Positions 25,953 to 48,647 of a DNA stretch of 48,647 nucleotides are shown one piece after another (the first letter of the stretch is position 1; every line of letters begins with the position of its first letter). The DNA is from Macrostomum lignano (Eukaryota), in assembly GCA_002269645.1 (NCBI GenBank), contig NIVC01004359.1, positions 1 through 48,647 of the forward strand, given 5' to 3'. The notes beneath the pieces are model-generated. The model saw only the letters and a program-made list of their open reading frames with translations, was not told the origin of the DNA and searched no databases. The position numbers and the translations under genes were made by a program.

Positions 25953-26006
<54 letters not shown>

Positions 26007-26047: not shown

Positions 26048-26083
<36 letters not shown>

Positions 26084-26181: not shown

Positions 26182-26242
<61 letters not shown>

Positions 26243-29920: not shown

Positions 29921-30256
29921 ATGAAAGCCAAAGCAAAGCCGGACAAATTGGCCAGCAAGTCGAAGCAGCAAAACGACGGAAAGGCGAGGCAGCAAAAATC
30001 AAAGCAGCCATCGAAGGAGGCCGTGATCAGGTCGAGGTCGGAGCAGCTGCAGCAACAGCAACAGCAGGAGCAGCAGACTTCGCAGCCTCAGGAGACGCCT
30101 CCGGAGCAGCAGCAAGCCAGTAAGCTGAGCGGCTACACCAAAGTTCATCAGGCGATTGACGCGACCCACACTGTGGCGCAGGCGCTGAGTCTGCTTGGCC
30201 TGCGGGAGGCGCCAAAACCCAAGCTGCCAAGGAGGCAGGGAAGGAGGAAAAAGTAA
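29921..30256 (+). CDS. Orphan 111-aa basic, Gln-rich protein
   Basis: Strong acceptor (tgcactttcag) ends at 29900, 20 nt before the ATG; G/C-rich third positions; ends KPKLPRRQGRRKK. No family recognised. Confidence 0.5.
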   Translation: MKAKAKPDKLASKSKQQNDGKARQQKSKQPSKEAVIRSRSEQLQQQQQQEQQTSQPQETPPEQQQASKLSGYTKVHQAIDATHTVAQALSLLGLREAPKPKLPRRQGRRKK

Positions 30257-30611
30257 CGACGCGCAGCGTACGAAGTGTCCTGACGACGTACAATTATCAT
30301 TTTTGTGTTTAACATTTCTTTAAACTCTCTTTAGACTCTTTTGTATGGAATTGTATCCGTGTTTCACGGAGCTCCACGGTGTTTTTATTGTCGTGAGAAG
30401 CGTTCAAACAGATATAAATATTTCTGGCAAAAATTTAAATTAGGAAAGGAAACGCGTGAAAAACACTTTGCATTACGACTCGTCAGCCTGTCGAGTTATC
30501 CAATCGAATGCTTAAGCTTTTTCACGCACTGAAGGTGTTTATGATAAAAACGCTTTGATTAGTTCGTATTAAGTACGCTCGTAACTATTCGTCCGTGATG
30601 TGATCTTATTG

Positions 30612-30952
30612 TCACGCCCTCAGATCCGCTTTCTTTCCATTGTCCTTTTTCAAGTCGTAGGCGGTGATAACATCCGGCATGGCTTTCTGTACGTACATCA
30701 TCGGGTCGCGAGGTCCGTCGAGCAGGAAGTGTGTTGTGAGGTGACCAACGCCCTTAACAGTGATGGAGCCCCTGGTCTCAAAGCTGTAGCCTCTCTGTTC
30801 CAGGCCTTCCCGCACGGTTCCCGTCACCTGTATGCGATCTTGAAGTCCGCTGCTCTCCATTCTTGAAGCGATGTTGACCGTGTCGCCCCAGATGTCGTAC
30901 TGGGGCTTGCGCGTGGCGATCACTCCGGCGATTACCACGCCGTGGTTCACTC
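30612..30952 (-). CDS. Adenylate cyclase last exon, C2a end
   Basis: [35 protein letters not shown]...[12 protein letters not shown]; AATAAA on the minus strand at 30384-30389. Confidence 0.96.
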
Positions 30953-33900
30953 CTGGGTTGTAAAGTGCTTAAATTTAAAGTAGAACTTGAACATACGCAG
31001 ATGCGTTACTTCTCAGTCGCAATAATTTTTACACTCGGTGGAGCAACTAACATCCTGATGTTCTTGGCATTCGACAGCTGAACAATCGCAGACAGTTTTA
31101 AGTATCTCTACATCACCACGAGAACTAAAAGTTTAGTCTATCACTTCAATCAATTTATATGGTTTTAATGCGAAAGGTGTGTGCGATTTTCGCTAAATTA
31201 CTTAAGCAGGGAAGGCACAGTTTCAATTACTTTTAAGTGTGACAACATCCCATACTCTATAAAATGTATTCATTTCAGGAAAATCTGAACAAATGACACA
31301 ATACCAAACAGACACAATTGACACAGTAGCAAACAGACACAACTGACACATTACTAAACAGACACAACTGACACAATACCAAACAGACACAACTGACACA
31401 ATACCAAACAGACACAACTGACAAAATAGCAAACAGACACAACTGACACAATACCAAACAGACACAACTGACACAATACCAAACAGACACAACTGACACA
31501 ATACCAAACAGACACAACTGACACAATACCAAACATACACAACTGACACAATACCAAACAGACACAACTGACACAATACGCTCGTAGCAAACAGACACAA
31601 CTGACACAATACGCTCGTAGCAAACAGACACAAGATACCAGAGACTAATCAGTGAAGTGGACTCACCGATGCGCATCTTGAACGAGGCGAACAGGTTGCG
31701 ATTGTGAATGCAGATGAGACGCAGCAGGGCGAGAGCAAAATCCGCTGTGTCTTCCAGGTGGCGCTGCCGTTGTTTCCTGCGCAGCTCCTGGCCGTCGCCC
31801 GGGTGCCGCTGGGTGTCGGCAGACAGGCCGGCAGCCGCCATGTAGGTGGAGCCGATAGTTTTAATTTTCTCCACGCAGCTGAACTGTCGTTGAAGATCGT
31901 CGAAATCTGAGATGATCTCGTTGAGCACTAGGCAGCAGGTCTGCTCATCGAATCTAGCCATGTCCATGTAGTACTCTGAGAAGTTGCAAATGGAAGCGAA
32001 GATCACGGTGGTCTCCCAGCAGTGCTCCGAGTAGATTTCCTGCGAGTTGAGAAAGTGCTCGGCCACGTGAGGCGGCAGGATGTTATTCACAAGCCGTTGA
32101 TTTTTTCGCTTCATCTTCTCCGTGCTCTTGTTGGCCTCGTAGGCTTGAGATTTCCACATGAAGTCAAGCCGGACGGTGATCTCCACCAGGTGAGACTGGA
32201 CCACCACGATGAGCAGAGCGGACAGGATTAACAGGTTGCAGTTGATCCACTGCAGAGGGAAATTATCCCGGTCAGCGCAGCAGTGCTTCTGCACCAAATC
32301 CACGCTGCGAAAGTCCGAATGAAAAGCGAAAAAGCTGGACAGAAGGTAGATGACGAACATGACCAGTCCGATGGCGGATTTCCACAGGAAACTGCTGTAG
32401 GTGAAGCAGGTCAGGCTGAGGATAGACAGCGAGGCCGAAAATGTTGTGTACTGGAAGTTGGGTTGGAAACGGTTTAGGGATGATTGCAATCGATAACTGG
32501 AAAATCTGTGCTGTTTGCCTATTTTGATATTGTTTCAGCTGTGTCAATTTAGTATTGAGTCTGTTTTTGTCTGTTTAGACTGTTGTGTGTATTTAGTATT
32601 GTGTCAGTTGTGTCTGTTTGGTATTGTGTCAGTTGTGTCTGTTTGGTATTGTGTCTGTTTAGACTGTTGTGTGTATTTAGTATTGTGTCAGTTGTGTCTG
32701 TTTGCTATTGTGTCTGTTTGGTAGTGTGTCAGTTGTGTCTGTTTGGTATTGTGTCAGTTGTGTCTGTTTGGTATTGTGTCTGTTTGGTAGTGTGTCAGTT
32801 GTGTCTGTTTGGTATTGTGTCTGTTTGGTAGTGTGTCAGTTGTGTCTGTTTGGTATTGTGTCTGTTTGGTAGTGTGTCAGTTGTGTCTGTTTGGTATTGT
32901 GTCTGTTTGGTATTGTGTCAGTTGTGTATATTTGGTAGTGTCGAAGCATTGATTTGGTATTGAATGCGACTCGAACACAAATACTCTGAAAGCCACAGTC
33001 AGATACTCCAAATACTACTAACAGTAGCTTAAATGCGTGCAAACTTGTCTGGCAAATTTAAATTTCACACACAGAGCTGAACTCTCACCTCGGGCATCGC
33101 CAGCTCTGCTCGATGGCAGACTCCGTCTGTCAGTGCACTGCTGCTCAGGCAGTAGGAAGTCCAGTTGCTGTCGTGTTGGCTGTTGACGTGGTCCTCCAAG
33201 TCCAAGCAACCAGTTTGTGTGAACTGTAAACGAATTCTTACGCGAAATATAAATTGCGCTTAACTTCAAAAATTCAAGGCTTGCATCAAGGTGAGCCATC
33301 TGTCGGCTATCTGTCGGTTAACAAATTTATTCGCCAACGAAGTCGAGTTGAAAAAGAGGATTTGGTTGTCCAAATCTCAAGGGGTTGCAGCCTAGTGGTC
33401 AGAGCGTCGGACACGCGACTTGAAGGTTGAGGGTTCGATTCCCGATCCCACTGGAACAATTTAATGTTCAACCCAGCTGTAAAATGGGTGCCAGCATTAG
33501 CTGGGGTAATTGAGGGTGTGTGACGACGACCCCCCCCCCAGTCCTTGGACTGAAAAGCCGTACGCATCGTTCAGATGCGCCGCGCAATAGCTGCGGCTGA
33601 GCTGTCGGTTGCACATCTGGCCCAATTATTATTTATTATTATCCAAAGATGGCAAACTTTACAGATCAGGCTTGGAGCGGCTTGTAACTAATTTGCAGGC
33701 TGTCATTGCATGCAGTTAAGTAAATATTACAAATAATTATTTCGCAAAACTGTGTTACCTTGGGAACCAAGATTGACACGAGATTAGCCACCATTCCGAT
33801 CAGTATGGAGCCGTTGACAAAAATTGACCAAATGTGTCCGCTCGCGATTTTCTGAAAAAAAAATAAAAATGTGTCAAAATGCTTACCTCTACTATGTAAG

Positions 33901-36900
33901 TAGACTAATGCGGATTTTAAATTCGCAACTCACCATTCGATCTGTTGTGAAGGCCACAGCGCAGGCGAACAGCGTGGTTAAGGTGACGAACGAGAACAGG
34001 TAAATTGGCACCATGGTCATCGAGCTGGAATGAGCGCGAGTTAATTGGTGAAAAGCATCTCATAAAACCAGCCTAAATGCTGGATTGTTTGCATTTGATT
34101 GGCATTGGGAAATGACAATAAGGGGAAAAAGGCTGAGTTGAGCTATCGACACTTCAGGATTCAAGTCGAGTGCTCTGCAAAGTTTGCAATAAGCACTTTA
34201 TGAGTCTCATTTAGAAGAGAGAGCAGGGCTCGTAACAGTTGAAAAATTATGGTCAAGTGAGAGACTTGGAAACTTCTGCAGTCTGGCTGAAGTCTCATAT
34301 CCTGGCTGTCTATGGGGATGATGAGCAGCTTTGATTAGCAGGTTGGTCCAAATTTGATGGCACTGTTGCCAAAACTAGAAATTCACTCGCTTTAACAGTT
34401 CAATATTAGTCCGCACCTCGAATCCACCGCCAGTCTGCATACCCTCAACCTGTCTACCAATCTGTGTCCCTATCTACCAATCTGTGTTCCTATCTACCAA
34501 TCTGTGTTCCTATCTACCAATATGTGTCCCTATCTACCAATCTGTGTTCCTATCTACCAATCTGTGTTCCTATCTACCAATATGTGTCCCTATCTACCAA
34601 TCTGTGTTCCTATCTACCAATCTGTGTTCCTATCTACCAATCTGTGTTCCTATCTACCAATATGTGTCCCTATCTACCAATCTGTGTTCCTATCTACCAA
34701 TCTGTGTTCCTATCTACCAATCTGTGTTCCTATCTACCAATCTGTGTTCCTATCTACCAATCTGTGTTCCTATCTACCAATCTGTGTTCCTATCTACCAA
34801 TCTGTGTTCCTATCTACCAATCTGTGTTCCTATCTACCAATCTGTGTTCCTATCTACCAATCTGTGTTCATATCTACCAATCTGTGTCCCTATCTACCAA
34901 TTTGTCTCCTTATCTTCCTATCTGTTCTCTATATCTACCAATCTAGCTCCCTATCTACCAATTTGTCTTCCTGTCCCTACCTACCAATCTGTTCTCCCAA
35001 TCTACCAATCTGTGTCCCTATCCACCAATATGTCTTCCTACCAACCTATACCAATCTGCCTCCCTATCTAGTACACATTAATTCACAATCAATTATCTAT
35101 CTCCAACTATACCCACACTGAACTTACCTACGCTGAGTCAGAATTTGAACGCAAAACGTGCCAGTGAGAAAGGCCAACAGAAGACAGCTGACTTCAATGG
35201 AGAAGTAGGGATCTCTCACGGTGCCGAACTGCAGATAGAGAGTTGCAGCGAAATGAACAAAATATATAAGGATGGTTAGGCTGTAACTATGAAGTTGACC
35301 CAGTTTATAATCCAAACTTTAACTCACACAGTGGGCAATAGTCTGACCTAGACTGTGACCTAGACTGTGACCTAGTCTGTCAACCAGCCTGTGACCCAGA
35401 CTGTGACCCAGACTGAGACCCAGACTGTGACCCAGATTACGAGTATGACCCAGACTGTGACTCAGACTGTGACCCAGACTGTGACCCGGACTGTGACCCA
35501 GACTGTGACCTAGTCTGTGACCTAGACTGTGACCCAGACTGAGACCCAGACTGTGACCCAGATTATGACCCAAACTGTGACCTAGTCTGTGACCTAGACT
35601 GTCAACCAGCCTGTGACCCAGCCTGTGACCCAGACTGAGACCCAGACTGTGACCCAGACTGTGACGTAGTCTGTCACCTAGACTGTGACGTAGTCTGTCA
35701 CCTAGACTGTGACCTAGTCTGTGACCTAGACTGTGACCCAGACTGAGACCCAGACTGTGACCCAGATTATGACCCAAACTGTGACCCAAACTGTGACCCA
35801 AACTGTGACCCAGACTATGGCTTTTATCAACAATAATCCTGATAAAAATATTCCCGACCTTCTTTTCCAGCCGGGGAAGCTTGAACCGCAGGTTGACGGG
35901 GTGGCAGTGCTCCTGGTACAAGCTGTCGATGGTATGAGACTGGATTGCCGAGCTCAACGCTTCGTTGATTACTGCATCATTGACGCTTCGAGTTCGGTTG
36001 CCGTGATCATCGACTCCCATTCTAGTGGCGATTGTTTAGAGTAGAGTAAAGTCGAGAAGAGTAGAATAGAATAGAGTAGAGTAGAGTAAAGTAGATAAGA
36101 GTAGAGTAGAATAGAGAAGAGTAGAGTAGACAAGAGTAGACTAGAGTAGAGTAGAGTAAAGTAGATAAGAATAGGGTAGAGTAGAGTAGAGTAGAGTAGA
36201 GAGTAGAGTAGACTAGACTAGACTAGACTAGACTAGAGTAGAGTAGAGTAGAGTAGAGTAGAGTAGAGTAGACTAGACTAGACTAGACTAGACTAGACTA
36301 GACTAGACTAGACTAGACTAGAGTAAACTAAAGTAGAGTAGAGTAAGGAGTAGAGTAGAATAGACTAGACTAGAGTAGACTAGACTAGAGTAGAGTAGAG
36401 AAGAGTAGAGTAGAATAGAGCAGAGAAGAAACAAGCAGACTAGAGCAGAGAGTAGAATAGACAGTAGCAAAGCACCAATGAAGCCAGGTATGCAAAAGCA
36501 AAACTGACCCAGCCACCTTTTATGAATGTGAGATGCCGGCCGCCTTCCCTGACCAGCAGGTTCTGCTGCATCGCCGCAGTGCTGAGGCTGCTGCTGCTGG
36601 TCAGCCGGCACCACCAGAAAAGTTTTCACCCGATGCTCTCTCAGATAAGCGTGCCGGCTTTCACCTTCGCCGTCCTCAAAGCTGTAATCTCCGCCGAGGC
36701 TGTCGCGGGTCACCTCGGTGATGTGCACCCGGCCAGGCCGGCCGCTGGACTCCAGGATCTCCGCCAGGTAGACGTCGCCCGACCAGACGTCGAACTGCAG
36801 TTTGTCGCGGCCGAGAACTCCGCAGATCACCGTGCCGGTGTGAATACCGACTCTCATGTCCACCGGGGCGTTGGTCATCACGCGGACTAGTCTGCCGATA

Positions 36901-39900
36901 TGTATCGATAATAGAATTAAAGCCAAGCAGATTTAAAAAATTTGCCGATATGTATCGAAGTTAAAATAAAATCCTGTCTATTATACATGGCCTATCTTAT
37001 ATAAATGTTCCCGTATATAGGGTTTGCCAATTAGGAGCCGTAGCCCAGTGGTCCAGCGCGGCGCTCTGATGTACCAGCGGCCCAGGCTCGATTCCCAGTG
37101 TAGCCACACATTAATTTGGGGCTAAATTGGAATCTCGGCTTGGCTCTGCTCGGGCAATTAACGCCCTTGAGAACCAACCCCCCCCAAGGCGCAGTGAAGT
37201 GTACATGCCTAACGATAAATAAAGTCGGGGCCACTGTACACTCCTGTGTGAGTGCCTGTGCGTATGACTGCGTACGTGTCTGGGCGCTTGTGTGCCTGCT
37301 CAGGGGAGTCGGCGGAATGGGCAGTAATGCCTCTCGCCGGTTGTGTGACAATTTCGCCTAAAGTGCGCTTAAAGTCCCCTTTGCTGGCTGCCTCTAGGTT
37401 AGCCAGTTTAGGAGTTTTACCGATATGTATCGAAAGTCAATTTAAATTACACGTTCAATATGTATCGAAGATTGAGTGGGAATAACACTCATTTTCAAAC
37501 ATTGCCGATATGTATCAAAACTGAGCTTACTCATAAATCATTTTCAAGCTCGTACTCGTATTTTAATAAGTCATGAGCATAAACTGACACTTTAAAATTT
37601 TATTAGCCCGCCCAGGCAGTCATATTTTATCGATGATGAAGAGCTGCTCCACAGTCCAATAAATTATGCTGGAGTTCGGCCTGAAGCCGGGGCTGCCGTC
37701 CGAAATTCGGGACTCCCGCTGAATCTGGGCCGCTGTGCCCAGGATTTGGACCGCAACAGCATGTACAGTCTGAGCCATGTGGGCTGGCCTTCATGGGTGT
37801 GAATTGACAGACCCCCCCCAAGCACCAAACGAACGCGTTTACGCACAAAATCCAACCAAGGGCCGTGTGGTGCAAAAGTCAAAAATAAAATTTCAAGCTC
37901 ATGAAACTTTAAGCTTGTGAAAGTCGCACGAAAAAAAACTGGTGCTGATGATATCGAATGTCACATCGTCGAAGGCACTAAACTTTAATAATCTTAATTA
38001 TTAAAACGTTTGAGGCCCACTCACGATATGGTGGAGATCATGTCCAAGCCCATCTCAACGCAGCACTTGGCGTGGTCGGCCCTGGGTTCCGGCAGTCCGG
38101 ACACGCAGTAGTAGCAGTCACCCAGCAGCTTGATCCGCAGGCAGTTGTTGCTTTCAGCCAGCTGGTCGAATCTGGCAAACAGAACGTTGAGCAGCCGGAC
38201 GATGAACTCCGGGTCGTTCTGACGACACAGCGTGGTGAAACCGCAGATGTCCGCAAACAGAATGCTGGAAATGCCGAGTCATCTTGGTTCAATTCTGTGC
38301 ATTCAAAAAACTAATCATTGATTAGTTATCGAGCCAGCATGACACACTGTAGCACTGACGCATAGTTCTCATTCATGGTCATTGTGACACGAGGCGAAGT
38401 CGGAATTTTGCAGGAAATTTGAAGAGGCCATCAAGATAAGTCGAGTGCTTAGGTCGAAGTGCATAAGTAACTCTCTGGGATTTTAGAGATGCCGACAGCC
38501 TTGAGAGCTGAAAATTAGCTGCTTAAGGATTAAGAAGTTCTTAATGACGACAGGTAAAAGTCTCAGTCAGAGCCGGCTACGGCCTGTTGACCTGAGTTTG
38601 AGGGAGTTATTCGCACTGCATAGTCTCTGCAGTTCCGCCCTTTGCTTGCCTCATCCTCTTTAGGCTCTCCTTCTCCGTCTAAAGCTGTCTGTTTTCACTT
38701 CGTGACTCCGACTTTGAATTTTCATTTCCAGCATCTTTGCTCGTCCCCTCTTGTTCCTCGTTCAGCCTCCACCAGAGATTAATATAGCCTGCATAATAAG
38801 TGTACACCAGGCAATGCAGCTACACCTGCCAAAGTCAACGAATCAAAAAAACAGCCCGACCCAGCTTGTGAAATGCAAACATGCAGCTACTGTATGCATG
38901 AAGTAGAAAGTTCCACTTTAACTATTTTATATTTGTACGAATTCTCTTTTGGCTACCAGTTTAGAAGATGTTTAATCTAGTGGGTAAAGTGGGTATAGTA
39001 AGCCTCAGCATTAGCTTCAGAAGTTGCTAAAATCAAAATTAGATTGTATCTTACTTAAGTACGAAAGGTACTTAAATATACTTCAGTATTATTCATTTTT
39101 CGCACTCAGTCATGCGTACAAAAAATTCAGATGTACATTTGGCCTTCGCTGGGGGGGGGACGAAATTCAGATGTACATTTGGCCTTCGCGGGGGGGGACG
39201 AAATTCAGATGTACATTTGGCCTTCGCGGGGGGGGACGAAATTCAGATGTACATTTGGCCTTCGCGGGGGGGATGAAATTCAGATGTACATTTAGCCTTC
39301 GCGGGGGGACGAAATTCAGATGTACATTTGGCCTTCGCGGGGGGGACGAAATTCAGATGTACATTTGGCCTTCGCGGGGGACGAAATTCAGATGTACATT
39401 TGGCTATATACTTGATCTTGGTCTATATACCAAGAAATTGATTAATTAAACAAAACATTAAAAACAAAACACGTCTTAGAAACCGAATGTTGCTACTCAC
39501 CTAACATTTTCATGTCTCTGTATGTAAACTTTGTTAAACATCGATCTGTGCGCTGGATTCTTCTCGGGATGTAGCAGCGGAGACGCCACGTACTCCGGCA
39601 GAAGCGACAGTATCAAACGGTCCTTGGGTAAATCAGTTTGTTAATTTTACTATTACATTTTTATACAGAAGAACGTTACAATCGTCATTTTTTACTCCTC
39701 TTGACTGAGCGGGTGCTGTTTATCCCGAATCGATTTAAGGATCTGTGGTGACCACTAGGAATGATTCGAAAGTTGCTACGCAAGAAAACCATTGAAGAAA
39801 AAGTAATTAATTCCCTTTGGTTTTTGCAGGGCTTCTCGTGTGAGGAAAAGTATCAGCAAGAAATCATTGAGTAGAATAGACTCACTTCGGCTGCCTGGAT

Positions 39901-42610
39901 ACTTTAAGCTCTGGGCTTGAACTTCGATCTTATTGTGGCCAATGTGACAGCAGACCCTAATGCATTCGCTCTCATTTCCTTTGAGTTTATAAGGCTTCCT
40001 GTTTTGATTTTTGTCTTATGGATTTTATGCTTGTTAGTCTCATCAAAGTGAAATATTCGCCTTCACTTCCCGCCATTTCTCTTTGCAGAGTTTCCCTAGC
40101 CGGCGCTCACCAGCTTCTCCATTTCCAGCTTGGCGCGCAGTCCGGCTTCGTAATAGCGCCTGGTTTCCAGGAAAGTCTGCCGGCGGCCCATCTCCACGGG
40201 GCCGTGCACGAAAACGCCCACTATGTTTGCGGCGAGCAAGTAGAACGCGTTGGCCGCAAGCTGCATGCAAGGGCAATGGGGGTTCAATGTACACCAGCCA
40301 GCTGCTACGGGGTGAAGAATTCAATATACATTGGCCATGTCACTGTGGGGTGGGAGTTCAATGTACATTGGCCAGCCACTGGGGGATAGGAGTTTAATGT
40401 ACATTGGCCAGCCACTGGGGGGATAATGTACATTGGCCAGCCACAATGTACATTGGCCAGCCGCTGGGAGTGCTGTACATTGGCCAGCCACTGGATGGGA
40501 TGTTCAGTTTACATTGGCCAGCCACTGGAGGGATGGGAGTTCAATGTACATTGGCCAGCCACTGGGGGGATGGGAGTTTAATGTACATTGGCCAGCCGCT
40601 AAAGGAAAGGAAATTTAAAGTAAATTATCCAGGGTATGGCAAATTGTTGTACCGATTAGCCAATCAATCTGTCAATGCGAGTTACGTGATTCAATATTAC
40701 GGAAACTAAAGGTCGATATGACGATATCAGAACAGAAAAGTGACAAAAAAGCTTTTATCACACACAAAAATTTTGACTACCACTACCAGCTCGTCACGAA
40801 TGTGATTTCTAATCCGTGAATTAAGGAACCAGTTTGAGAGCTTAATCTCTACAGAAAACTTGCTAGATCCGATCCAAAAGAATGCAGAAATGTTCTGTCT
40901 ACCTTCAGCCTGCGAGCGTCAGTCGATGTGACTGACTCGGGGACGGGGTGGACTCCGGCCGCCCCCCCCCCCAGGGGCATGAGAGGCAGGACTTCTCACA
41001 GTTGAGTGCGCAGGCGAGTGGACGACAGGCCTTTTGCCCGTGATCTTGTCGGGCCTAATTAGAGCGAGGCGGCCGTCAGGGTGTGAAAACGGGAGAATGT
41101 GGAGCAAAGATAAGATCCCGCTCGCTTCATTCAGCTGCTCAGTTCCTACTGGCACTGATACATTTTCTGACGTGACCTCCAACCAATAAAAGCTGCATTT
41201 TCGTGCAAGGTTATTTGGCTTAGGCTGACATCGCGTTTAAAAAGCAGTGAGCTGTTTACGCTTGAGCAGTCATCAATTTGAGAACGGTCGCCCGCGTGTC
41301 CGGTGGATATTCAGGTGGGGGCGAAGTGACCTCGGATGACCTTTTAGTGCTTACCTCGAATGGCAATCATCAAGGTTTGAGAAACCTTGATAATTGCCAT
41401 AATTGGGAGAAAATCACACGCTCTTCTAATTGCACTCAAACGTGGAACTGTTGAAAAATTACCCGTTTACTCTGACTACAACCCGGGTGTAGCGGCCAAA
41501 ATCCCAAGATTTCGACGCTACCCTAATTTATTAAATCAAATCGGGATTCGGGCAGACAAGATGATTTATTTGCTGCTGAGCCATTGAGTGTCTCTGAAAT
41601 CTGGTTGAAAAGCAATGAGCCTACTCGCAGAATTGCTACAAAGTGTAGCGATGGCGAAGATGCTGGTTCAAGCGAGAGACGCCACCCCACTCCAGCTCGC
41701 GTACCCGAGCACCGAAATCCGGTCGGTTCATTCCAGAAATTCTAGACAACAGGTGCAGCATCATGATGAGGCCGCAGCAGGCCAGCAGGCTGCGAACACG
41801 CAACGGCAAGAACAGGTAGGCGATGACCGTCATCAGCGAGCTGGTGAACAACCCGCTGCTCGGCTTCCAGCACAGCGGATCTGGCTCCTCGCCGATGCGA
41901 ATGACGCTGGCGCCCTGCAGCAGCAGGAAGCAGATGGCCAACCCGTAGCTCAGGTGCTGCTGCCGGGCCAGGCCAACGCGACAGCGCAGCATACCAATCA
42001 GGAGACCGCTGAAGCCGGCGAAGGCGACAGTGGAGAGGCTCAGGTGCAGCAGGGTGTTCTCAGATGGACCGCGGGCCGTCTGCGGCAGCTGCGTGACGGC
42101 GGAACCGGCGCTCAGAAGCGTCAGCGTTGCCACCAGAACGAGCAGGGAGCGATGGTTCAGCCGGCGAAAGTACATCTGGTAGAGCTGCTCGAGCTCGGCG
42201 CCTGGGAACACCTTGGAAGAGAAGAGGCACTTGAACAGGATGGCCAGGAAGCGCCAACTCTCAGCGCAGTTCGCCGGCGGCTTGGTGTGCAGCAGGTCGC
42301 TGATGGTGTCCCGGTTCGGGTCCAGGCGCTGCAGGGCAGAGCTGTGCGACGATTCGGAGTCTCTGGGCCGAGTGTTCCATCGACCGCTGCTACTGCCAAC
42401 CTTGCTGCCGCCGCGCGCACTGGCGGTGCCGCCGCCTTCGCTGCCACCGATTCTGACAATTTTCGTCGTTCTCTGAAGTCGCTGCCAGCCCGACGGGCGA
42501 TCCGGGTTTCTTCGAAGCATTCGGGCGACTTCCTTCGGCGCCGATATTTGGTCGCCGTTGCCGACTGAAACTGGATCGGCGTCCACCATCGGGGCCGGGT
42601 GGACGCTCAT
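30612..42610 (-). CDS. ADCY: Transmembrane adenylate cyclase (ADCY5/6-like), 11 coding exons, about 1165 aa
   Basis: complement join(41705-42610,40111-40260,39501-39622,38025-38264,36517-36891,35859-36021,35128-~35316,33934-34024,33089-33223,31667-32450,30612-30952). C1a [11 protein letters not shown] and GDCYY (both metal-binding Asp); C2a [13 protein letters not shown] and [16 protein letters not shown] (Lys/Asp/Asn/Arg intact). One junction is unresolved. Confidence 0.95.
31294..31632. repeat. 25-bp minisatellite ACACAATACCAAACAGACACAACTG (array A)
   Basis: About 13 units; reverse complement of the array at 32535-32940. Confidence 0.95.
31667..32450 (-). CDS. Adenylate cyclase exon 10 (784 nt): last TM helices and C2a first half
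   Basis: YTTFSASL...[10 protein letters not shown]...[70 protein letters not shown]. Confidence 0.96.
32535..32940. repeat. 25-bp minisatellite CAGTTGTGTCTGTTTGGTATTGTGT (array B, inverted relative to array A)
   Basis: The unit is the exact reverse complement of the array A unit. Confidence 0.95.
33089..33223 (-). CDS. Adenylate cyclase exon 9, extracellular loop
   Basis: [45 protein letters not shown]|Y; phase 0/0. Confidence 0.85.
33381..33640 (+). mobile_element. SINE family 1, copy 2 (internal deletion, ATT-rich tail)
   Basis: GCAGCCTAGTGGTCAGAGCG..GGGTTCGATTCCC..shared body..ATTATTATTTATTATTAT. Confidence 0.88.
33934..34024 (-). CDS. Adenylate cyclase exon 8, TM helix
   Basis: [30 protein letters not shown]; phase 2 in, phase 0 out, consistent with both neighbours. 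Confidence 0.85.
34450..35070. repeat. 20-bp minisatellite (TATCTACCAATCTGTGTTCC)
   Basis: Tandem periodicity. Confidence 0.95.
35128..35316 (-). CDS. Adenylate cyclase exon 7, two TM helices (5' boundary unresolved)
   Basis: [52 protein letters not shown]; strong donor AG|gtaagt. All candidate acceptors are phase 2 while the upstream donor is phase 0. Confidence 0.7.
35340..35820. repeat. 12-bp minisatellite (CCCAGACTGTGA), reading (HSLG)n on the minus strand
   Basis: Tandem periodicity. Confidence 0.95.
35859..36021 (-). CDS. Adenylate cyclase exon 6, C1b
   Basis: [43 protein letters not shown] resembles ADCY5/6 KRMGF..EFLGRAIDARSIDRL..EH..F..LEKK. Confidence 0.88.
36040..36455. repeat. 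(GTAGA)n/(CTAGA)n compound microsatellite
   Basis: Direct inspection. Confidence 0.93.
36517..36891 (-). CDS. Adenylate cyclase exon 5, C1a second half
   Basis: [70 protein letters not shown]. Confidence 0.96.
37034..37410 (+). mobile_element. tRNA-derived SINE family 2, copy 1
   Basis: A box TAGCCCAGTGG, B box GGCTCGATTCC; body GGGCTAAATTGGAATCTCGGCTTGGCTCTGCTCG..CCTAACGATAAATAA is shared with 48464-48647. The 3' end is approximate. Confidence 0.8.
38025..38264 (-). CDS. Adenylate cyclase exon 4, C1a catalytic Asp residues
   Basis: [58 protein letters not shown]. Confidence 0.97.
39123..39405. repeat. ~37-bp minisatellite (GAAATTCAGATGTACATTTGGCCTTCGCGGGGGGGAC)
   Basis: About 8 units. 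Confidence 0.93.
39501..39622 (-). CDS. Adenylate cyclase exon 3
   Basis: [27 protein letters not shown] matches ERLLLSVLP..MFHKIYIQ.H.NVS. Confidence 0.94.
40111..40260 (-). CDS. Adenylate cyclase exon 2, TM6 and coiled coil
   Basis: [50 protein letters not shown]. Confidence 0.92.
40285..40600. repeat. ~36-bp minisatellite (TTCAATGTACATTGGCCAGCCACTGGGGGATGGGAG)
   Basis: About 9 degenerate units. Confidence 0.9.
41705..42610 (-). CDS. Adenylate cyclase exon 1, N-terminus and first TM cluster
   Basis: MSVHPAP...[27 protein letters not shown] (ADCY5/6 N-terminal motif) and hydrophobic helices; donor CGG|gtacgc. Confidence 0.88.
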
Positions 42611-43894
42611 TGCCGTCCTCAGGATGAAGTTTCTGTGGCTTCTGAGTGCTGATTTAATTGGATCCTGCAGCAAGATAGAAATGGAGTAGTTTTGTTGGTG
42701 CTCTACAGGTATTAGCGGGTTACCGTATTCAACAACAACGCAAAAAAGGTCTTGTGTTTTCACAAAGTATGAGCAGCATCACAGGGCAAACGTCGCGTGT
42801 GTTCAAAGTACTCAAAGTACTTATAAAGGTAATTCACAACGAAAATCGGTTAAAAAGTCACAAGGAAGACCTCAATCTTCTTTAGAAGATCATCTTCGTT
42901 CACGGAAAAAAAATCATGCGGACGCACAGACAGACAGAACCAATTCTGTATATTTCAGGTAGGGACGATTACCGGTATTCAAATAGGAATACCTACGAAT
43001 TTTCAAGCGTTGTAGCTGAAACCTTGATTCAGACTTGGCTTTGCCGCCGCTTCCGAACTCGAAGAGCTCTTTCTTCTTTTGCCATGCAACTCGGGCAGAT
43101 GGAGAGCTGTTTAAATAGCCGTTAAAGCCTCCCTCCAGCTTCGATTAAATGCATTGGTGCAATGTTGCCGCCCCAGCTCGGCTGTTTGCTCACCAGAGTA
43201 GATAAGGAAGCAGGGTCGGACTTGAGCAAGTGAGGCTCTTAGCAACAGCTGAGGCCAAACTAAGATTTCGTATGAGATTTGATAATAAAGAGAACACGTG
43301 TGTTTCTGAGATTCTGGGCCACCCACATCCTTAGGCTTATTCTACTCGTACTCGCGTAGACGTGCCGCATCGATATGAATTTTGTCAGGCCCAGCTTCCC
43401 AGCTGCATCACACATTGGAGTAGTCCTTCAGACTCGATAGGCAACAGTCTGACTGAGGTTGGACTTAGCATAAATCCCGAGCTGATACCGCTGGGCCTTC
43501 GAACTCAGACTTTATGAAGTCTTTTCCCGTGAAACATAAGTCAACTCTGGTTGAGCAAGCATGAGATAAGAGCACAAAACTGCTGAGGCAAAATGTCAGG
43601 CATCGTGGTGTGATGGAAAATCTGTTCTCGGAAGCTTATCTGTTACTGAAATTCGAAAGACAACAAAAATTTCGCTTACAGTGTTGATGAAGCGGGATTC
43701 TGTGCGGTATAAGAAAGAAAAGCACAGAAATGCAATTGAAAATTTTATGCACGCGGGCTTCGCACATTCAAAAATCAATTTCGATGATTGCGGTGAGGTC
43801 ATCGCCACAATCAGTCATTGTCATCTCGTTCAACGGTTACTCAGATTGCTGAATAAGTAGTAGAAATTATTTATTAAAGCTGCTTGCAAATTAC

Positions 43895-43900
43895 TTTATT
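43895..43900 (-). terminator. Polyadenylation signal AATAAA of the neuropeptide gene (second copy at 43870-43875)
   Basis: TTTATT on the + strand, about 120 and 145 nt past the TGA. Confidence 0.6.
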
Positions 43901-44016
43901 GACCATTTTGGCAGGAAAAATAGTCAATTTTCACTTGAATCTCAAATAGATGACAAGTTTGCTTTCTTTAAGTGATCGTGTTGTCAGTTGGTCATTCATT
44001 TCTGGATCCTTGACTG

Positions 44017-44465
44017 TCACTCCGAACGCTTTTTTAGGATGTCCCGGTCCAGCATGAAGTCGGGTACCTGGTGAAGCGTTTCTTCAGAATGCCCCGGTCC
44101 AGCATGAAGTCGGGGTACCTGGTGAAGCGCTTCTTCAGAATGCCACGGTCCAGCATGAAGTCGGGGTACCTGGTGAAGCGTTTCTTCAGAATGCCACGGT
44201 CCAGCATGAAGTCGGGGTACCTGCTGAAGCGTTTCTTCAGAATGCCCCGGTCCAGCATGAAGTCGGGGTACCTGGTGAAGCGTTTCTTCAGAATGCCCCG
44301 GTCCAGCATGAAGTCGGGGTACCTGGTGAAGCGTTTCTTCAGAATGCCGGTCCAAGCATGAAGTCGGGGTACCTGGTGAACCGCTTATCAAGGTGCTTGA
44401 TGCCGTCGTCCTGGTGAACGTTCTTCGTATCATCATGGTGCTTCTCTGCACCAGTTACATCCAAT
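44017..44465 (-). CDS. Neuropeptide precursor exon 2: 7 x F[T/S]RYPDFMLDR[G/D]IL flanked by KR/KKR (two apparent frameshifts)
   Basis: Acceptor ttctcccttgcag|; 51-bp in-frame unit; the terminal unit keeps ILKKR through five synonymous codon changes; ends KKRSE-TGA. Confidence 0.85.
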
Positions 44466-45036
44466 CTGCAAGGGAGAATGCAAAACTTCAGAATTAGACC
44501 ACATGTAGCTGAAGGTCTAGCAAGTCCAGTTTGCATTCAGTGCCAGTATTTTCTTCAAGGGGCCACCTTATCACGAGCTAAACTTAATAAAAATGTAATC
44601 AAATCCGTCTCTGCGACCCTGGGCGTCTGTCTCTTGTCACGGAATTTTGTGTTACTACGCAGGCCAAAAGCTCCTCAGACATCTCAAGAGCTCTTCTGGT
44701 GAAAAGAGACCTTGGGCTTCTCAGTTTAGACCACAGACGCCCCTATTTATTCCAGATTATGTAAGCCCAATGATTAAAAGTTTATATGCATTTTACAGTC
44801 CACTGGGACTGCAGATGATCTCTTGTCAGCGTGTGTCCCATCCCAAATCTTGGGTTTCAGATCTGAAGTCGCATAGGAAAGACTAATGCATTGAGAAGCT
44901 CTACAATGAAAGCTCAAAGGCCAGAGGTGACAACTCAGAATTTCGCTATCCGTTCAAGAAGTCGTGTTCTATCCGCTTTCCTAGTTTTGAATTGGGTCCT
45001 CGCAGCAAGAGGCGGTCTGTTGTTAGACCAAAAATG

Positions 45037-45275
45037 TGTTGTAGCCTAGTGCTTAGAGAGGGGTTCGATTCTCAACCTACTTAAAAATTGTATCCTTAAG
45101 CAAGACACCTAATTCTGCATTGCTTCACTACACCCAGCTGTAAAATGGGTGCCAGCATTAGCTGGGGTAATTGAGGGTGAGTGTGGGGACCCCCCAGTCC
45201 TTGGACTGAACAGCCGTACGCAGCCTTCAGATGCTTCAGAGCTGTCGGCTGCAAATCTTCCCATTATGGCAGGTG
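45037..45275 (+). mobile_element. SINE family 1, copy 3 (in the neuropeptide intron; deletion between the A and B boxes)
   Basis: GTAGCCTAGTG..GGGTTCGATTC..CCTTAAGCAAGACACCTAA..CCCAGCTGTAAAATGGGTGCCAGC. Confidence 0.88.
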
Positions 45276-45348
45276 TAATGAAAAATACAAATTTTAAGAC
45301 ATGTCATTTAAACTATTTAGCTGGCAGATAGTTACTACAGGAACTCAC

Positions 45349-45395
45349 ACCACGGCGCCGAGCAGGACTATCGACAGAATCAATGGCGATCGCAT
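45349..45395 (-). CDS. Neuropeptide precursor exon 1, signal peptide
   Basis: MRSPLILSIVLLGAV+GT|gtgagt; the phase 2 donor joins the phase 2 acceptor at 44465 to give ..GAVVLDVTGA-EKHH. Confidence 0.85.
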
Positions 45396-45889
45396 GGCAA
45401 AGCACTTTCTATAGTCAGAAGCGGAGCCTCTTCAGAAAGTTTCTTTCAGAAAGAGGGTCTTTTTAATTGTTGAGAGACTCTATCGCTGGGAAGCAGATGG
45501 CTCGGTAATGAAGACAAATGCGCTTGGAATAAAGGAAAAAGTTTTTATGCCAGCGACTCGGCTCTCTGGGCTAGAATGCGCCGTTATAAAGGGAAGCGTC
45601 ACTGGGAACTCGCGCGCCTCCACACCCCGTCCCCTGCAGCAGTCGCAGCCATCGCATCCGCGCCTTCTCTCATCTTCCCACCCTTTCATTGGCTGCTGGG
45701 CCTCCTCGCCATATTCCTATGCCTTTGCGGGAAAGAAATTGAGAAGCGTTTGAAGAATCGCCCGGTCTAAAGATGATTAATTGACAGGGTCAGAAAAGCG
45801 ACTTCATCCTGGCCATCTTAATTTAAGAATTGAGGGATGACCTGAAAGCGTATTGAAACTCAAAATTTGAAACTTAAAAGTTAAGCGAT

Positions 45890-46750
45890 GGGCGCTGCGG
45901 TGGGATTTTAACCCTCAGGTTGCAGAGGTGGGATGTGAACCCTCGGGTGGCAGCGGTGGGATGTGAACCTCGGGTGGCAGCGGTGGGATGTGAACCCTCA
46001 GGTGGCAGCGGTGGGATGTGAACCTCTCGGGTGGCAGCGGTGGGATGTGAACCCTCGGGTGGCAGCGGTGGGATGTGAACCCTCGGGTGGCAGCGGTGGG
46101 ATGTGAACTCTCGGGTGGCAGAGGTGGGATGTGAACCCTCAGGTGGCAGCGGTGGGATGTGAACCCTCAGGTGGCAGAGGTGGGATGTGAACCCTCAGGT
46201 GGCAGAGGTGGGATGTGAACCCTCAGGTGGCAGCGGTGGGATGTGAACCCTCAGGTGGCAGAGGTGGGATGTGAACCCTCGGGTGGCAGCGGTGGGATGT
46301 GAACTCTCGGGTGGCAGAGGTGGGATGTGAACCCTCAGGTGGCAGAGGTGGGATGTGAACCCTCAGGTGGCAGAGGTGGGATGTGAACCCTCAGGTGGCA
46401 GAGGTGGGATGTGAACCCTCAGGTGGCAGAGGTGGGATGTGAACCCTCAGGTGGCAGAGGTGGGATGTGAACCCTCAGGTGGCAGAGGTGGGATGTGAAC
46501 CCTCAGGTGGCAGAGGTGGGATGTGAACCCTCAGGTGGCAGCGGTGGGATGTGAACCCTCAGGTGGCAGAGGTGGGATGTGAACCCTCGGGTGGCAGCGG
46601 TGGGATGTGAACTCTCGGGTGGCAGCGGTGGGATGTGAACTCTCGGGTGGCAGAGGTGGGATGTGAACTCTCGGGTGGCAGAGGTGGGATGTGAACCCTC
46701 AGGTGGCAGAGGTGGGATGTGAACTCTCGTGTGGCAGCGGTGGGATGTGA
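45890..46750. repeat. 28-bp minisatellite (CCCTC[A/G]GGTGGCAG[A/C]GGTGGGATGTGAA), about 30 copies, resembling the tRNA-Leu 3' end
   Basis: Tandem periodicity seen directly; the tRNA similarity comes from a remembered tRNA-Leu sequence. Confidence 0.95.
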
Positions 46751-47999
46751 GTCTTCAACCTTTATTCAAGATCGTCTCAAATTCAGAAGCCACATAATAT
46801 TCACTTACTTCTCGGTACCTCGATAATATGCTGAAAATATAATTTTTTCTCACCCCTCCCACAAAACAAGTGCACCACTGAAACAGAAAATAATTGATTT
46901 GGCTAGAGAAATCAATCACTTTATTGTGGGTGGCAGTGATGTATCTATTTTATTCCCTTCAATTCTTTCTCTCTCTCTACTTGTAATCCCGACCCTTGTT
47001 CCCCCAGTTTCCTTCTATATCGTTTCCTTCCAGCATCCATCGCGAAACAGATGAAGCGAGCGGGCATAAACTGCCTGGATATTTCAGCTCGCACAGACAG
47101 GCAGGAGATCCCAGAACAATCCCTGTTCCCCCGACCCCAATTGCACTATTTGATCAGCAAGGGGAGGCAGCACACGGCTTGCTCTCTTTATCAGCCCCTG
47201 CTCGCGCTAATTGAGTTATAAGCGGACAGGAATGATGCAGGGAGTTGAGCTCTTGTCTGACCCTGTCAGGACTGAGGCAATTTAAATCCGGGCCCTGAGA
47301 GCCCAGAGCCAGGTTTAAAGTTTCTCGCTCCTGTGTGATGACTTTTTCGACTAAAAACTTGCTTAAAAAAGCTCATCGGCTAAACTTGTTCCGGACTTGT
47401 TACTGTAGGGGAGACTTTCTGAGTTTGTTTGAGTTCTCTCATAGCTACATGCTCGCAAAAAAAGATTATTAAAGTTTCAAGTGAACTTTTGCAACACTGT
47501 CCCGATGGGGCGTGGATAATCTGAGATTATTCAGACCCAGCGAACAAAAATCCATCATCCAGACCAGACACTGATAGCGGTGTTTGCAGTTGAAATATTG
47601 TGTCAATATGTACATTTAATTAAGCAAATCGAAAAGTTTCACCTGATTGGTCTGAGAAATGATGGTGTCCGCGTTCTCATTTGAAAAACAAGTTTGACTA
47701 ATCGGTCGGTCTGACTATTTTGAGCTGAACTCAAACAATGTTTTTTCCATTTCTCCCACAGCGAGCGGTAAGGCAGATCCGCTCCGTTCCGCTGACTCCC
47801 GAACACGCGCTCACACAGGGTGTACCGGTACAGCTGCCCTGACTTTATTTATCGTCAGGCATGTGCACTTGGAGGTGTTGGCCAAGGACCACTAGGAACA
47901 CTTCGTTAGTCTAGTCTAGGCTAGTAGTCCTTGGTGTTGGCTCTCATGAGTGTGAATCGTACGACAAGACTGACCAATTTTGATGTGTCCGCTCACGGA

Positions 48000-48185
48000 A
48001 GGTTGAGCGGCATTCAGAGAGTTGAGCAGCATACAGAGAGTTGAGCAGCATACAGAGAGTTGAGCAGCATTCAGAGAGTTGAGCAGCATACAGAGAGTTG
48101 AGCAGCATACAGAGAGTTGAGCAGCATACAGAGAGTTGAGCAGCATACAGAGAGTTGAGCAGCATACAGAGGGTTAAGCAGCATA
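48000..48185. repeat. 19-bp minisatellite (CAGAGAGTTGAGCAGCATA)
   Basis: About 9 units. Confidence 0.93.
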
Positions 48186-48463
48186 CCTGTATAGCTAGCA
48201 TTAGTCACGTGCCGGTAAACAGAGCGAAATTAAGATAATTGGCCTCCGGCATCAGAACTCAATGCCAGCCAGCAAGTATAAATACATATCGCCTAATTAG
48301 CAAGTCTGAAGCATTGTTAGAAACCAAAGTTGATTCATCCCAATGCGAGTAGAAATATCTGGGAATTATATTTTAAAAGGCAGTCGCATTTGCCTATTTT
48401 CAGCCTTTATGCATTCACCTCTTCTGTTTGCTAATCATGCGAGTGTCACAGGTGCACAAATGA

Positions 48464-48647
48464 GGGGCGTGGCCTAGCAGGCTAGCGCGGCGTTCTGGTG
48501 TGCCAGCGGCCCAGGCTCGATTCCAAGTGCAGCTACAGATTATTTAGGGCTAAATTGGAATCTCGGCTTGGCTCTGCTCGTGCAATTCAGCCTTAAGGGC
48601 AACCCCAAGGCACAGTGCAGTGTACACGCCTGCCTAACGATAAATAA
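48464..48647 (+). mobile_element. SINE family 2, copy 2 (truncated by the window end)
   Basis: Colinear with 37034-37220. Confidence 0.8.

What the first reader, a model, noticed from the sequence alone, without database searches (positions are those of the whole stretch)
44017..45395. Hidden two-exon multi-copy neuropeptide precursor with an unrecognised peptide (FTRYPDFMLDRGIL x7)
Seen: a 47-nt exon encoding MRSPLILSIVLLGAV ends in a phase 2 gtgagt donor and splices in phase to a strong acceptor at 44465. The product has a signal peptide (..VLDVTGA|EK), an acidic/His spacer and 7 peptides bounded by KR/KKR, followed by a stop and two AATAAA. The last unit reads ATC CTA AAA AAG CGT against ATT CTG AAG AAA CGC in the others, i.e. 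five synonymous changes that preserve ILKKR. That argues for protein-level selection rather than a neutral minisatellite. Two indels in homopolymer context (~44345-44356, net -1; ~44062, -1) split it in the ORF track; adding 2 nt restores an ORF of about 165 aa. Established: dibasic sites are prohormone-convertase sites, and there is no Gly-Lys/Arg, so the peptides should be non-amidated. Inference: 14-mers with hydrophobic ends recall the pedal-peptide/orcokinin architecture, but I do not recognise the sequence, so it may be a new family.
Basis: partly seen in the sequence, partly recalled or inferred. Interest (0 to 1): 0.9.

Follow-up and report, generated by a model that had tools for sequence, protein, structure and literature searches.

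The report
Flatworm multi-copy secreted peptide gene, frameshifted copy
This is a real two-exon gene of the flatworm Macrostomum lignano for a secreted precursor carrying tandem copies of an undescribed 14-residue peptide, but this copy has two frameshifts and an intact, already annotated ("hypothetical protein") sister copy lies on another contig.

Summary
On the minus strand there is a 47-nt first exon, a GTGAGT donor, a CAG acceptor at 44465, seven 51-nt units, two frameshifts, a stop and two AATAAA signals.

The window is the whole contig NIVC01004359.1 of the M. lignano Mlig_3_7 assembly. A homeologous contig, NIVC01000393.1, carries the same gene intact: 199 aa with 9 units. GenBank annotates it from transcripts as hypothetical protein BOX15_Mlig001732g5, and that protein has exactly the predicted exon junction.

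Differences among the units are 9 synonymous to 2 non-synonymous in the peptide frame only (P = 6e-5). The array is therefore coding, not one more of the minisatellites that fill 33% of this contig.

No relative was found among 1.84 billion representative proteins, in Pfam, in the planarian prohormone catalogue or in the literature. The resemblance to pedal peptide/orcokinin does not exceed shuffled controls.

Best reading: a lineage-restricted multi-copy peptide precursor cut at KR/KKR into non-amidated FTRYPDFMLDRGIL. Neuronal expression is untested. Whether the window's frameshifts are consensus or polishing errors or a dying homeolog is unresolved. Interest is modest: a new orphan member of a known kind.

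The parts
45349..45395 (-). Exon 1 (CDS part): ATG plus 15 codons plus 2 nt. It encodes most of the signal peptide, MRSPLILSIVLLGAV(V).
   Evidence: It is 100% identical to the homeolog's exon 1, whose ATG is the annotated CDS start.
44466..45348 (-). Intron of 883 nt in phase 2, with a GTGAGT donor and a polypyrimidine tract plus CAG acceptor. It contains a dispersed repeat at about 45030-45300.
   Evidence: Only this donor/acceptor pair keeps the frame open. The junction matches transcript-based protein P0001. The intron differs from the homeolog at 15 of 881 aligned positions. Repeat copies lie at 27659-27889 and 33471-33578.
44381..44465 (-). Start of exon 2. It encodes the end of the signal peptide (..VLDVTGA|EK, cleavage inferred), the acidic/His-rich spacer EKHHDDTKNVHQDDGIKHLD, and the first KR site.
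   Evidence: It shows 0 of 85 differences from the homeolog. The -3/-1 rule (Thr, Ala) was read by eye; SignalP was not available.
44331..44380 (-). Unit 1, 50 nt, frameshifted. It has an extra T and lacks two G within CTTGGACCGGC (about 44356-44344).
   Evidence: The anomalies sit on the two positions that are polymorphic among units (C/T at unit position 24, G/T at position 32).
44076..44330 (-). Units 2-6, five intact 51-nt units: FTRYPDFMLDRGIL-KKR four times and FSRYPDFMLDRGIL-KKR once.
   Evidence: (91-aa ORF).
44026..44075 (-). Unit 7, 50 nt, frameshifted by CCCC to CCC (about 44066-44059). After repair it would read FTRYPDFMLDRDIL-KKR.
   Evidence: The homeolog's last unit is intact and also reads DRDIL.
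44017..44025 (-). C-terminal Ser-Glu and the TGA stop codon.
   Evidence: The homeolog's annotated CDS ends at the same stop.
43870..44016 (-). 3' UTR with two AATAAA signals (43900-43895 and 43875-43870).
   Evidence: It is conserved in the homeolog, with 4 substitutions in 137 nt.

Best explanation
The locus is one homeologous copy of a Macrostomum lignano gene for a small secreted preproprotein.

Proposed mechanism:
1. A signal peptide of about 22 residues takes the protein into the secretory pathway.
2. Subtilisin-like proprotein convertases cut after the KR and KKR sites.
3. A carboxypeptidase trims the basic residues.
4. This releases a spacer peptide and many copies of the non-amidated 14-mer FTRYPDFMLDRGIL, with minor FSRY... 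and ...DRDIL variants.
5. The peptides most likely act as a lineage-restricted signalling peptide, in the neuropeptide / 'multi-copy peptide' style.

What is shown: the gene structure, coding constraint on the peptide frame, an intact transcript-annotated sister copy with 9 units, and the absence of detectable relatives.

What is inferred: signal-peptide cleavage, convertase processing, secretion, and neuronal or endocrine use.

The copy in this window cannot make the full product as assembled, because of its two frameshifts. I rate 'consensus or polishing error inside a tandem repeat of a triplicated genome' and 'real decay of a redundant homeolog' as about equally likely.
For: - Gene anatomy was read directly.
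- The only database hit is M. lignano BOX15_Mlig001732g5, with the identical N-terminus and exon junction.
- Its locus NIVC01000393.1 is collinear with window 34144-48647 at 91-95% identity. It encodes an uninterrupted 199-aa, 9-unit precursor.
- GenBank gene models of Mlig_3_7 derive from StringTie/TACO/de novo transcripts plus TransDecoder (PMC5730564). The spliced mRNA is therefore supported for the sister copy.
- Among 11 distinct nucleotide variants across 15 units (6 window, 9 homeolog), 9 are synonymous in the peptide frame (binomial P = 6e-5). The next-best of the other five frames has 6 synonymous (P = 0.02) and the remaining four have 1-2 (P > 0.8).
- The unit is not dispersed. It occurs only at this site in the window and at the orthologous site in L001.
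- M. lignano has a PC2 homolog with a strong knock-down phenotype (PMC4490696).
- Species-restricted multi-copy peptide precursors are a common outcome of neuropeptidome surveys (PMC6188537).
- In favour of the error reading, the unit-1 lesion coincides with the two polymorphic unit positions. In addition, 93% of read pairs multi-map in this genome (PMC10733133), and Pilon polishing was used.
Against: - No expression pattern, peptidomic detection or receptor is known.
- The peptide has no Gly amidation signal and no similarity to any known neuropeptide. 'Neuropeptide' therefore rests on architecture only.
- The window copy is broken as assembled, and no gene model is on record for it.
- The neighbouring adenylyl-cyclase exon in the same contig keeps its frame over 372 aa. 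A near-identical twin contig differs from the window by only about 0.4-2.7 indels per kb. Base quality is thus generally good, which favours real frameshifts.
- Non-coding flanks between the homeologs carry 6-16 indels per kb. Two or three indels in 357 nt are what neutral decay would give.
- No transcript-derived fragment of this protein turned up in the protein collection beyond the GenBank entry.
Confidence: 0.7

Rival explanations
1. The copy in this window is a genuine pseudogene: a redundant homeolog of the recent whole-genome duplication that has picked up frameshifts. It now encodes at most a 57-aa product with one aberrant peptide. Only the NIVC01000393.1 copy (and possibly a third copy) is functional.
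For: - Two frame-breaking lesions are present as assembled.
- The indel density between homeologs in non-coding DNA (6-16 per kb) predicts about 2 indels in the array under neutrality.
- Unique coding sequence on the same contig is frame-perfect, and the twin contig differs little, so the assembly error rate looks low.
- The repeat number differs (7 against 9 units).
- No gene model is on record for this copy.
- DV1 carries three subgenomes, so redundancy is high (PMC10733133).
Against: - All lesions are homopolymer-length changes inside a tandem repeat, where long-read consensus and short-read polishing are least reliable.
- The unit-1 lesion falls exactly on the two polymorphic unit positions, as expected from mixed-paralog read pile-ups.
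- Splice sites, ATG, stop and the 132 nt of non-repeat CDS are all unchanged. That is only weak evidence: 0 observed against about 2.2 expected substitutions.
Confidence: 0.45
2. The gene is real and secreted, but the product is not a neuronal signalling peptide. It could be a gland-derived secretion, a pheromone-like or seminal/mucus peptide, or a repetitive secreted protein that is not cleaved at all.
For: - No tissue data could be obtained.
- The peptide is non-amidated, net-neutral (pI about 6) and matches no neuropeptide family.
- M. lignano expresses many lineage-specific secreted reproductive and gland proteins (knowledge of the field; e.g. PMC5977470 is listed).
Against: - Perfectly regular KR/KKR spacing.
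- Near-identical short units under purifying selection.
- An acidic spacer after the signal peptide and a total size of about 200 aa, which is the canonical prohormone layout. Compare the planarian prohormones in Collins et al. 2010.
- The peptide is not cationic or amphipathic like antimicrobial peptides.
Confidence: 0.2
3. The array is just one of the many neutral minisatellites of this genome, and it happens to lie in an open frame. The 'gene' would then be an annotation artefact.
For: - 33.4% of the window is tandem repeat.
- Many arrays give long spurious ORFs.
- The GenBank model of the sister copy is itself imperfect: 4 units annotated against 9 in the genome.
Against: - There is a frame-specific synonymous excess (9:2, P = 6e-5).
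- The unit length is a multiple of 3.
- The array is joined in frame through a canonical intron to a signal-peptide exon.
- The gene model is transcript-derived.
- The unit occurs nowhere else in about 91 kb of M. lignano sequence examined.
Confidence: 0.03

Closest known systems
Planarian pedal-peptide-prohormone-like genes Smed-ppp-1 and Smed-ppp-2 (Collins et al. 2010, PMC2953531 supplement)
   Same: Both are flatworm precursors of 100-200 aa. Both have a signal peptide, a short spacer, and 5-8 tandem non-amidated 11-12-mers ending in hydrophobic -LL and bounded by KR/KKR/RR. A BLASTP alignment with ppp-1 gives E = 9e-4.
   Different: The BLASTP score is driven by repeat period and dibasic sites. 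After permuting the 14-mer, 4.7% of shuffles equal or beat the real score against ppp-1, and 34% against ppp-2. The family core D-[PSK]-I-G-x-x-L-L is absent from FTRYPDFMLDRGIL. No 4-mer of the peptide occurs in any of the planarian prohormones.
Orcokinin / pedal peptide (PP/OK-type) neuropeptides of protostomes and echinoderms
   Same: Both have a multi-copy architecture and non-amidated peptides of 12-16 residues with acidic residues inside and hydrophobic ends.
   Different: Unit-level alignment scores against orcokinin, Aplysia pedal peptide, C. elegans NLP-14/15 and starfish SMP (all recalled from memory), and against flatworm units, are reached by 15-85% of shuffled peptides. The SGF/GGLL-type C-terminal motif is missing. 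The receptor relationship is untestable here.
Species- or clade-restricted 'multi-copy peptides' (MCPs) reported in neuropeptidome surveys, e.g. Thiel et al. 2018, PMC6188537
   Same: It meets the same operational definition: a signal peptide plus repeated near-identical peptides between dibasic sites, with no ortholog outside a narrow lineage. This is the category the gene fits best.
   Different: Those MCPs were called from transcriptomes and were in part confirmed by mass spectrometry. Here only genomic sequence and a transcript-based gene model exist. The taxonomic range, even within Macrostomum, is unknown.
GenBank BOX15_Mlig001732g5 (M. lignano hypothetical protein, 114 aa; P0001)
   Same: It is the same gene family and a homeologous locus. 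The N-terminal 44 aa, exon junction, peptide and C-terminus are identical.
   Different: Its locus has 9 in-frame units (199 aa), but the deposited model skips 255 nt (5 units). The window copy has 7 units and two frameshifts.

Membership tests
Convertase-processed multi-copy peptide (prohormone/neuropeptide-type) precursor | N-terminal signal peptide | tested here: met
   By inspection only. There is a basic n-region (MRS), an uncharged 14-residue h-region (PLILSIVLLGAVVL), and a c-region DVTGA with Thr at -3 and Ala at -1. SignalP was not available, so the cleavage site is inferred.
Convertase-processed multi-copy peptide (prohormone/neuropeptide-type) precursor | Repeated near-identical peptides each flanked by dibasic (KR/KKR) sites | tested here: met
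   There are 7 units in the window and 9 in the homeolog, all preceded by KR or KKR.
Convertase-processed multi-copy peptide (prohormone/neuropeptide-type) precursor | Purifying selection on the peptide frame | tested here: met
   There are 9 synonymous and 2 non-synonymous distinct variants, P = 6e-5. The antisense frame 1 reaches 6 synonymous (P = 0.02); the other four frames have 1-2 (P > 0.8).
Convertase-processed multi-copy peptide (prohormone/neuropeptide-type) precursor | Spliced, polyadenylated mRNA exists | tested here: inconclusive
   This is met indirectly for the homeolog. The GenBank protein with the predicted junction comes from a transcript-only annotation pipeline. No reads could be inspected, and nothing is on record for the window copy.
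Convertase-processed multi-copy peptide (prohormone/neuropeptide-type) precursor | Uninterrupted reading frame in this window | tested here: not met
   Two net -1 frameshifts, in units 1 and 7. The spliced ORF ends after 57 aa.
Convertase-processed multi-copy peptide (prohormone/neuropeptide-type) precursor | Expression in neurons or endocrine cells, and detection of the mature peptide | not testable with these tools
   No expression table containing Mlig001732 was found. Peptidomics was not available.
Pedal peptide / orcokinin (PP/OK) family | Sequence similarity of the mature peptide to family members beyond chance | tested here: not met
   Full-length Smith-Waterman scores were compared with 1000 unit-shuffled controls. 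The fraction of shuffles reaching the real score was 0.047 (ppp-1), 0.34 (ppp-2), 0.16 (P0008) and 0.047 (P0009). Unit-level fractions were 0.15-0.85.
Pedal peptide / orcokinin (PP/OK) family | Multi-copy, non-amidated peptides of 11-16 residues | tested here: met
   The peptide is a 14-mer with no Gly before the basic site. The feature is generic and not diagnostic.
Amidated flatworm neuropeptides (FLP/NPF/RL-amide types) | C-terminal Gly amidation signal before the dibasic site | tested here: not met
   Units end ...GIL-KKR, so Gly is not adjacent to the basic residues.
Neutral non-coding minisatellite | No frame-specific constraint, and the unit dispersed or unlinked to exon signals | tested here: not met
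   There is frame-specific constraint. The unit occurs only at this locus and its ortholog in the 91 kb examined. It is joined in frame to a signal-peptide exon. A genome-wide scan was not possible.

The most novel reading that the evidence does not exclude
FTRYPDFMLDRGIL is the founding member of a previously undescribed neuropeptide family, restricted to Macrostomum or to macrostomorph flatworms, with its own receptor. It is made from up to three homeologous genes, one of which is caught in the act of being lost after the recent genome duplication.
Probability: 0.35. Interest if true: 0.45.

Novelty: new member of a known kind. Interest (0 to 1): 0.3.

Why it matters
M. lignano is the only flatworm with routine transgenesis, yet its peptide-signalling repertoire is barely catalogued. 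A transcript-supported orphan multi-copy peptide gene gives a concrete candidate for in situ hybridisation, RNAi, peptidomics and GPCR de-orphanisation.

The case also makes two points about method:
- In a genome that is one-third tandem repeat, coding arrays can be told from minisatellites by frame-specific synonymous excess.
- Tandem-repeat genes are mis-modelled in this assembly. One copy is frameshifted and the other is annotated with 4 of its 9 units.

It does not change any general picture. Lineage-specific multi-copy peptides are routinely found in every neuropeptidome survey.

Tried and rejected
- Homology searches found nothing real. The word-indexed search of 5.8 billion proteins returned only the M. 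lignano entry. The exhaustive phmmer search against 1.84 billion representatives returned only that entry plus spurious TPR and other repeat proteins. Pfam gave nothing above threshold.
- Literature searches found nothing. 'RYPDFML' and 'Mlig001732' occur in no paper. The 5-mer hits were a nematode RdRP motif and file-name noise. McVeigh et al. 2009 (PMC2749192) is not held.
- Supplements of Wudarski 2017, Grudniewska 2018 and Mouton 2018 contain no entry for the gene. No expression information was obtained.
- The planarian prohormone catalogue contains no 4-mer of the peptide in a comparable context.
- The pedal-peptide lead looked promising: BLASTP E = 9e-4 against Smed-ppp-1. It was rejected after shuffle controls.
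- I tried to find gene models or transcripts for the window copy through exact-product look-ups of its ORFs. None is on record, and the spliced 57-aa product was not accepted by the tool.
- I asked whether the non-repeat CDS shows constraint since the homeologs split. The result, 0 of 132 substitutions against 15 of 881 in the intron, is not significant.
- ARAGORN found no tRNA in the intronic tRNA-like segment.

Full report
**1. What is in the sequence**

On the minus strand an ATG at 45395 opens a 47-nt exon encoding MRSPLILSIVLLGAV plus two bases. It ends at a GTGAGT donor. An 883-nt intron ends in a pyrimidine tract and CAG, and exon 2 starts at 44465.

Spliced in phase 2, the frame reads ...VVLDVTGAEKHHDDTKNVHQDDGIKHLDKR and runs into a 51-nt tandem array. 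TRF places the array at 44039-44380, with 6.7 copies and 96% matches.

- Five units (44330-44076) are intact. Four encode FTRYPDFMLDRGIL-KKR and one encodes FSRYPDFMLDRGIL-KKR.
- Unit 1 is 50 nt. It reads CTTGGACCGGC where the others read CTGGACCGGGGC.
- Unit 7 is 50 nt. It reads TACCCGAC where the others read TACCCCGAC.
- Unit 7 is followed by Ser-Glu, a TGA stop at 44019-44017, and AATAAA signals at 43900 and 43875.

As assembled, however, the spliced ORF stops after 57 aa. The 165-aa product exists only after a 2-nt repair.

**2. Where the window comes from**

The repaired protein has one hit among 5.8 billion proteins. It is Macrostomum lignano hypothetical protein BOX15_Mlig001732g5 (P0001, 114 aa), with the same first 44 residues including the predicted junction.

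An exact look-up of the window's intact ceramide-synthase ORF shows that the window is the entire contig NIVC01004359.1 (48,647 bp) of assembly GCA_002269645.1, known as Mlig_3_7.

P0001 is encoded on a different contig, NIVC01000393.1 (L001). That contig is collinear with window 34144-48647 at 91-95% identity. Substitutions run at 1.7% in the intron and 3-5% in the flanks. This fits the 2-2.4% SNP divergence reported between the three subgenomes of the neopolyploid DV1 line (PMC10733133). The two loci are therefore homeologs.

A third contig, NIVC01004123.1, is a near-identical twin of the window (99.6%). It ends before reaching the peptide gene.

**3. The sister copy is intact and transcript-supported**

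In L001 the same ATG, donor and acceptor give an uninterrupted 199-aa ORF. It has nine in-frame units, eight ending GIL and a last one ending DIL.

GenBank models of Mlig_3_7 were produced only from mapped transcripts (StringTie/TACO plus a de novo assembly) with TransDecoder ORFs (PMC5730564). The deposited protein therefore vouches for the splice junction. The deposited model has only four units because it skips 255 nt, which is five units. This is most likely a collapsed-repeat artefact. That explanation is my inference.

**4. Coding array or minisatellite?**

This matters because 33.4% of the contig is tandem repeat, and many arrays yield long meaningless ORFs.

I pooled the 15 units that could be aligned in register: six from the window and nine from the homeolog. 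There are 11 distinct nucleotide variants. In the FTRYPDFMLDRGILKKR frame, 9 are synonymous and 2 are conservative or terminal replacements (Thr to Ser, Gly to Asp). With 11.7 synonymous sites out of 51, the binomial P is 6e-5. The antisense frame 1 reaches 6 synonymous (P = 0.02), and the remaining four frames reach 1-2 (P > 0.8). By my own hand count, not a tool result, the window's units alone give 6:2 (P about 0.003).

The unit occurs nowhere else in the window, and in L001 only at the orthologous site. It is absent from L002 and L003. The neutral-satellite reading is effectively excluded. A genome-wide scan was not possible.

**5. What the product most likely is**

The N-terminus has the n/h/c layout of a signal peptide, with Thr at -3 and Ala at -1 (..VTGA|EK). 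This was judged by eye, because SignalP was not available.

An acidic, His-rich spacer follows, and then identical short peptides separated by KR/KKR. This is the canonical prohormone layout. It is the same as in planarian prohormones, for example Smed-ppp-1/2 and ppl-1 in the supplement of PMC2953531.

The inferred mechanism has four steps:
- ER entry
- proprotein-convertase cleavage after KR/KKR
- carboxypeptidase trimming
- release of non-amidated FTRYPDFMLDRGIL, since no Gly precedes the basic site

The peptide has monoisotopic M 1742.881 and pI about 6. An alternative cut at the R-F-T-R motif would give YPDFMLDRGIL; this is speculative.

M. lignano has a PC2 homolog whose knock-down is severe (PMC4490696). 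Nothing here shows neuronal expression. A non-neuronal secreted peptide remains possible; I put that at about 0.2.

**6. Comparison with known families**

- Pfam gave no family.
- Exhaustive phmmer against 1.84 billion representatives returned only the protein itself and spurious repeat proteins.
- No paper contains the peptide or the gene identifier.
- No 4-mer of the peptide occurs in a comparable context in the planarian prohormone catalogue.

BLASTP against Smed-ppp-1 gives E = 9e-4. When the 14-mer is permuted and the KKR sites are kept, the share of shuffles that equal or beat the real score is:
- 4.7% for ppp-1
- 34% for ppp-2
- 16% and 4.7% for two ppp-like proteins found in Logan assemblies

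Unit-level scores against PP/OK peptides fall well inside the shuffle distribution. The resemblance is therefore one of architecture, not of family membership.

The best category is an orphan 'multi-copy peptide' precursor. Such precursors turn up as species- or clade-specific genes in every neuropeptidome survey (PMC6188537).

**7. The two frameshifts**

Evidence for assembly or polishing error:
- All changes are homopolymer-length changes inside a tandem repeat.
- The unit-1 lesion lies exactly on the two positions that vary among units (C/T at position 24 and G/T at position 32). That is what a mixed pile-up of paralogous reads would produce.
- The assembly is Canu on PacBio reads with Pilon polishing, in a genome where 93% of read pairs multi-map.

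Evidence for real decay:
- The neighbouring adenylyl-cyclase exon keeps one frame over 372 aa against the homeolog.
- The twin contig differs from the window by only 0.4-2.7 indels per kb.
- Non-coding DNA between the homeologs carries 6-16 indels per kb, which predicts about two in the array.
- The unit number differs (7 against 9).
- No gene model is on record for this copy.

The unchanged 132 nt of non-repeat CDS is not informative, with about 2.2 substitutions expected. I leave this near 50:50. Anchored long reads or a HiFi assembly would settle it.

**8. Verdict**

The gene is real, coding and secretory in design, and the peptide is undescribed.

Four qualifications apply. It is not hidden, because a sister copy is annotated as a hypothetical protein. 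The window copy may be dead. The neuropeptide role is inferred. The PP/OK affinity is not supported.

Novelty: a new, orphan member of a known kind. Interest: modest, 0.3.

Noticed in passing
L001 10001-11483 (NIVC01000393.1): The GenBank model BOX15_Mlig001732g5 encodes 114 aa with 4 peptide units. The genomic locus encodes an uninterrupted 199 aa with 9 units. The model skips exactly 255 nt (5 units), probably through a collapsed-repeat transcript mapped with a false intron.
   Followed up: yes
window 30612-42763 (minus strand): A multi-exon transmembrane adenylyl-cyclase gene lies here. It has AC_N in the exon at 41636-42763 and Guanylate_cyc catalytic domains at 36318-36926, 31275-32489 and 30612-30950. 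It starts only about 1.1 kb downstream of the peptide gene's poly(A) signals on the same strand. The gene name suffix 'g5' hints that several genes may share one transcriptional unit, as is common in this trans-splicing species. I did not examine co-transcription.
   Followed up: partly
window 28105-29165 (minus strand): There are piggyBac-type transposase fragments (DDE_Tnp_1_7, E = 6e-26) split over two ORFs, lying between adenylyl-cyclase exons.
   Followed up: partly
window 45030-45300, with copies at 27659-27889 and 33471-33578: The intron of the peptide gene contains a dispersed repeat with a tRNA B-box-like GGTTCGATTCTCAACC on the plus strand, which looks SINE- or MITE-like. ARAGORN calls no tRNA. 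The homeolog has the same insertion, so it predates the duplication.
   Followed up: partly
whole window: 33.4% of the contig is tandem repeat. Examples are a 16-nt unit repeated 105 times at 17764-19448, (TGTC)n at 13014-14436, a 28-nt unit repeated 30 times at 45899-46750 just upstream of the peptide gene, and a 20-nt unit repeated 50 times at 9489-10507. Many of these create long spurious ORFs.
   Followed up: partly
window 13670-34797 versus L003 (NIVC01004123.1): A second contig of the same assembly is 99.1-99.6% identical to window 22538-33761 and encodes an identical 375-aa ceramide synthase (TRAM_LAG1_CLN8; window 23670-24797). This is either the same haplotype assembled twice or the L1/L2 subgenome pair. 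It ends before the peptide gene.
   Followed up: partly
window about 12620-16957 (plus strand): There is a collagen-like Gly-X-Y ORF at 12620 onward. An annotated gene whose product hits Endostatin (PF06482) overlaps the (TGTC)n and (GTA)n arrays.
   Followed up: no
P0008, P0009 (Logan assemblies): Two unannotated precursors carry tandem MLDPIGxxLL-KKR and xDPIGGGYLL units. They are clear relatives of planarian Smed-ppp-1, from unknown source organisms. They could be useful for defining the flatworm or spiralian pedal-peptide-like family.
   Followed up: no
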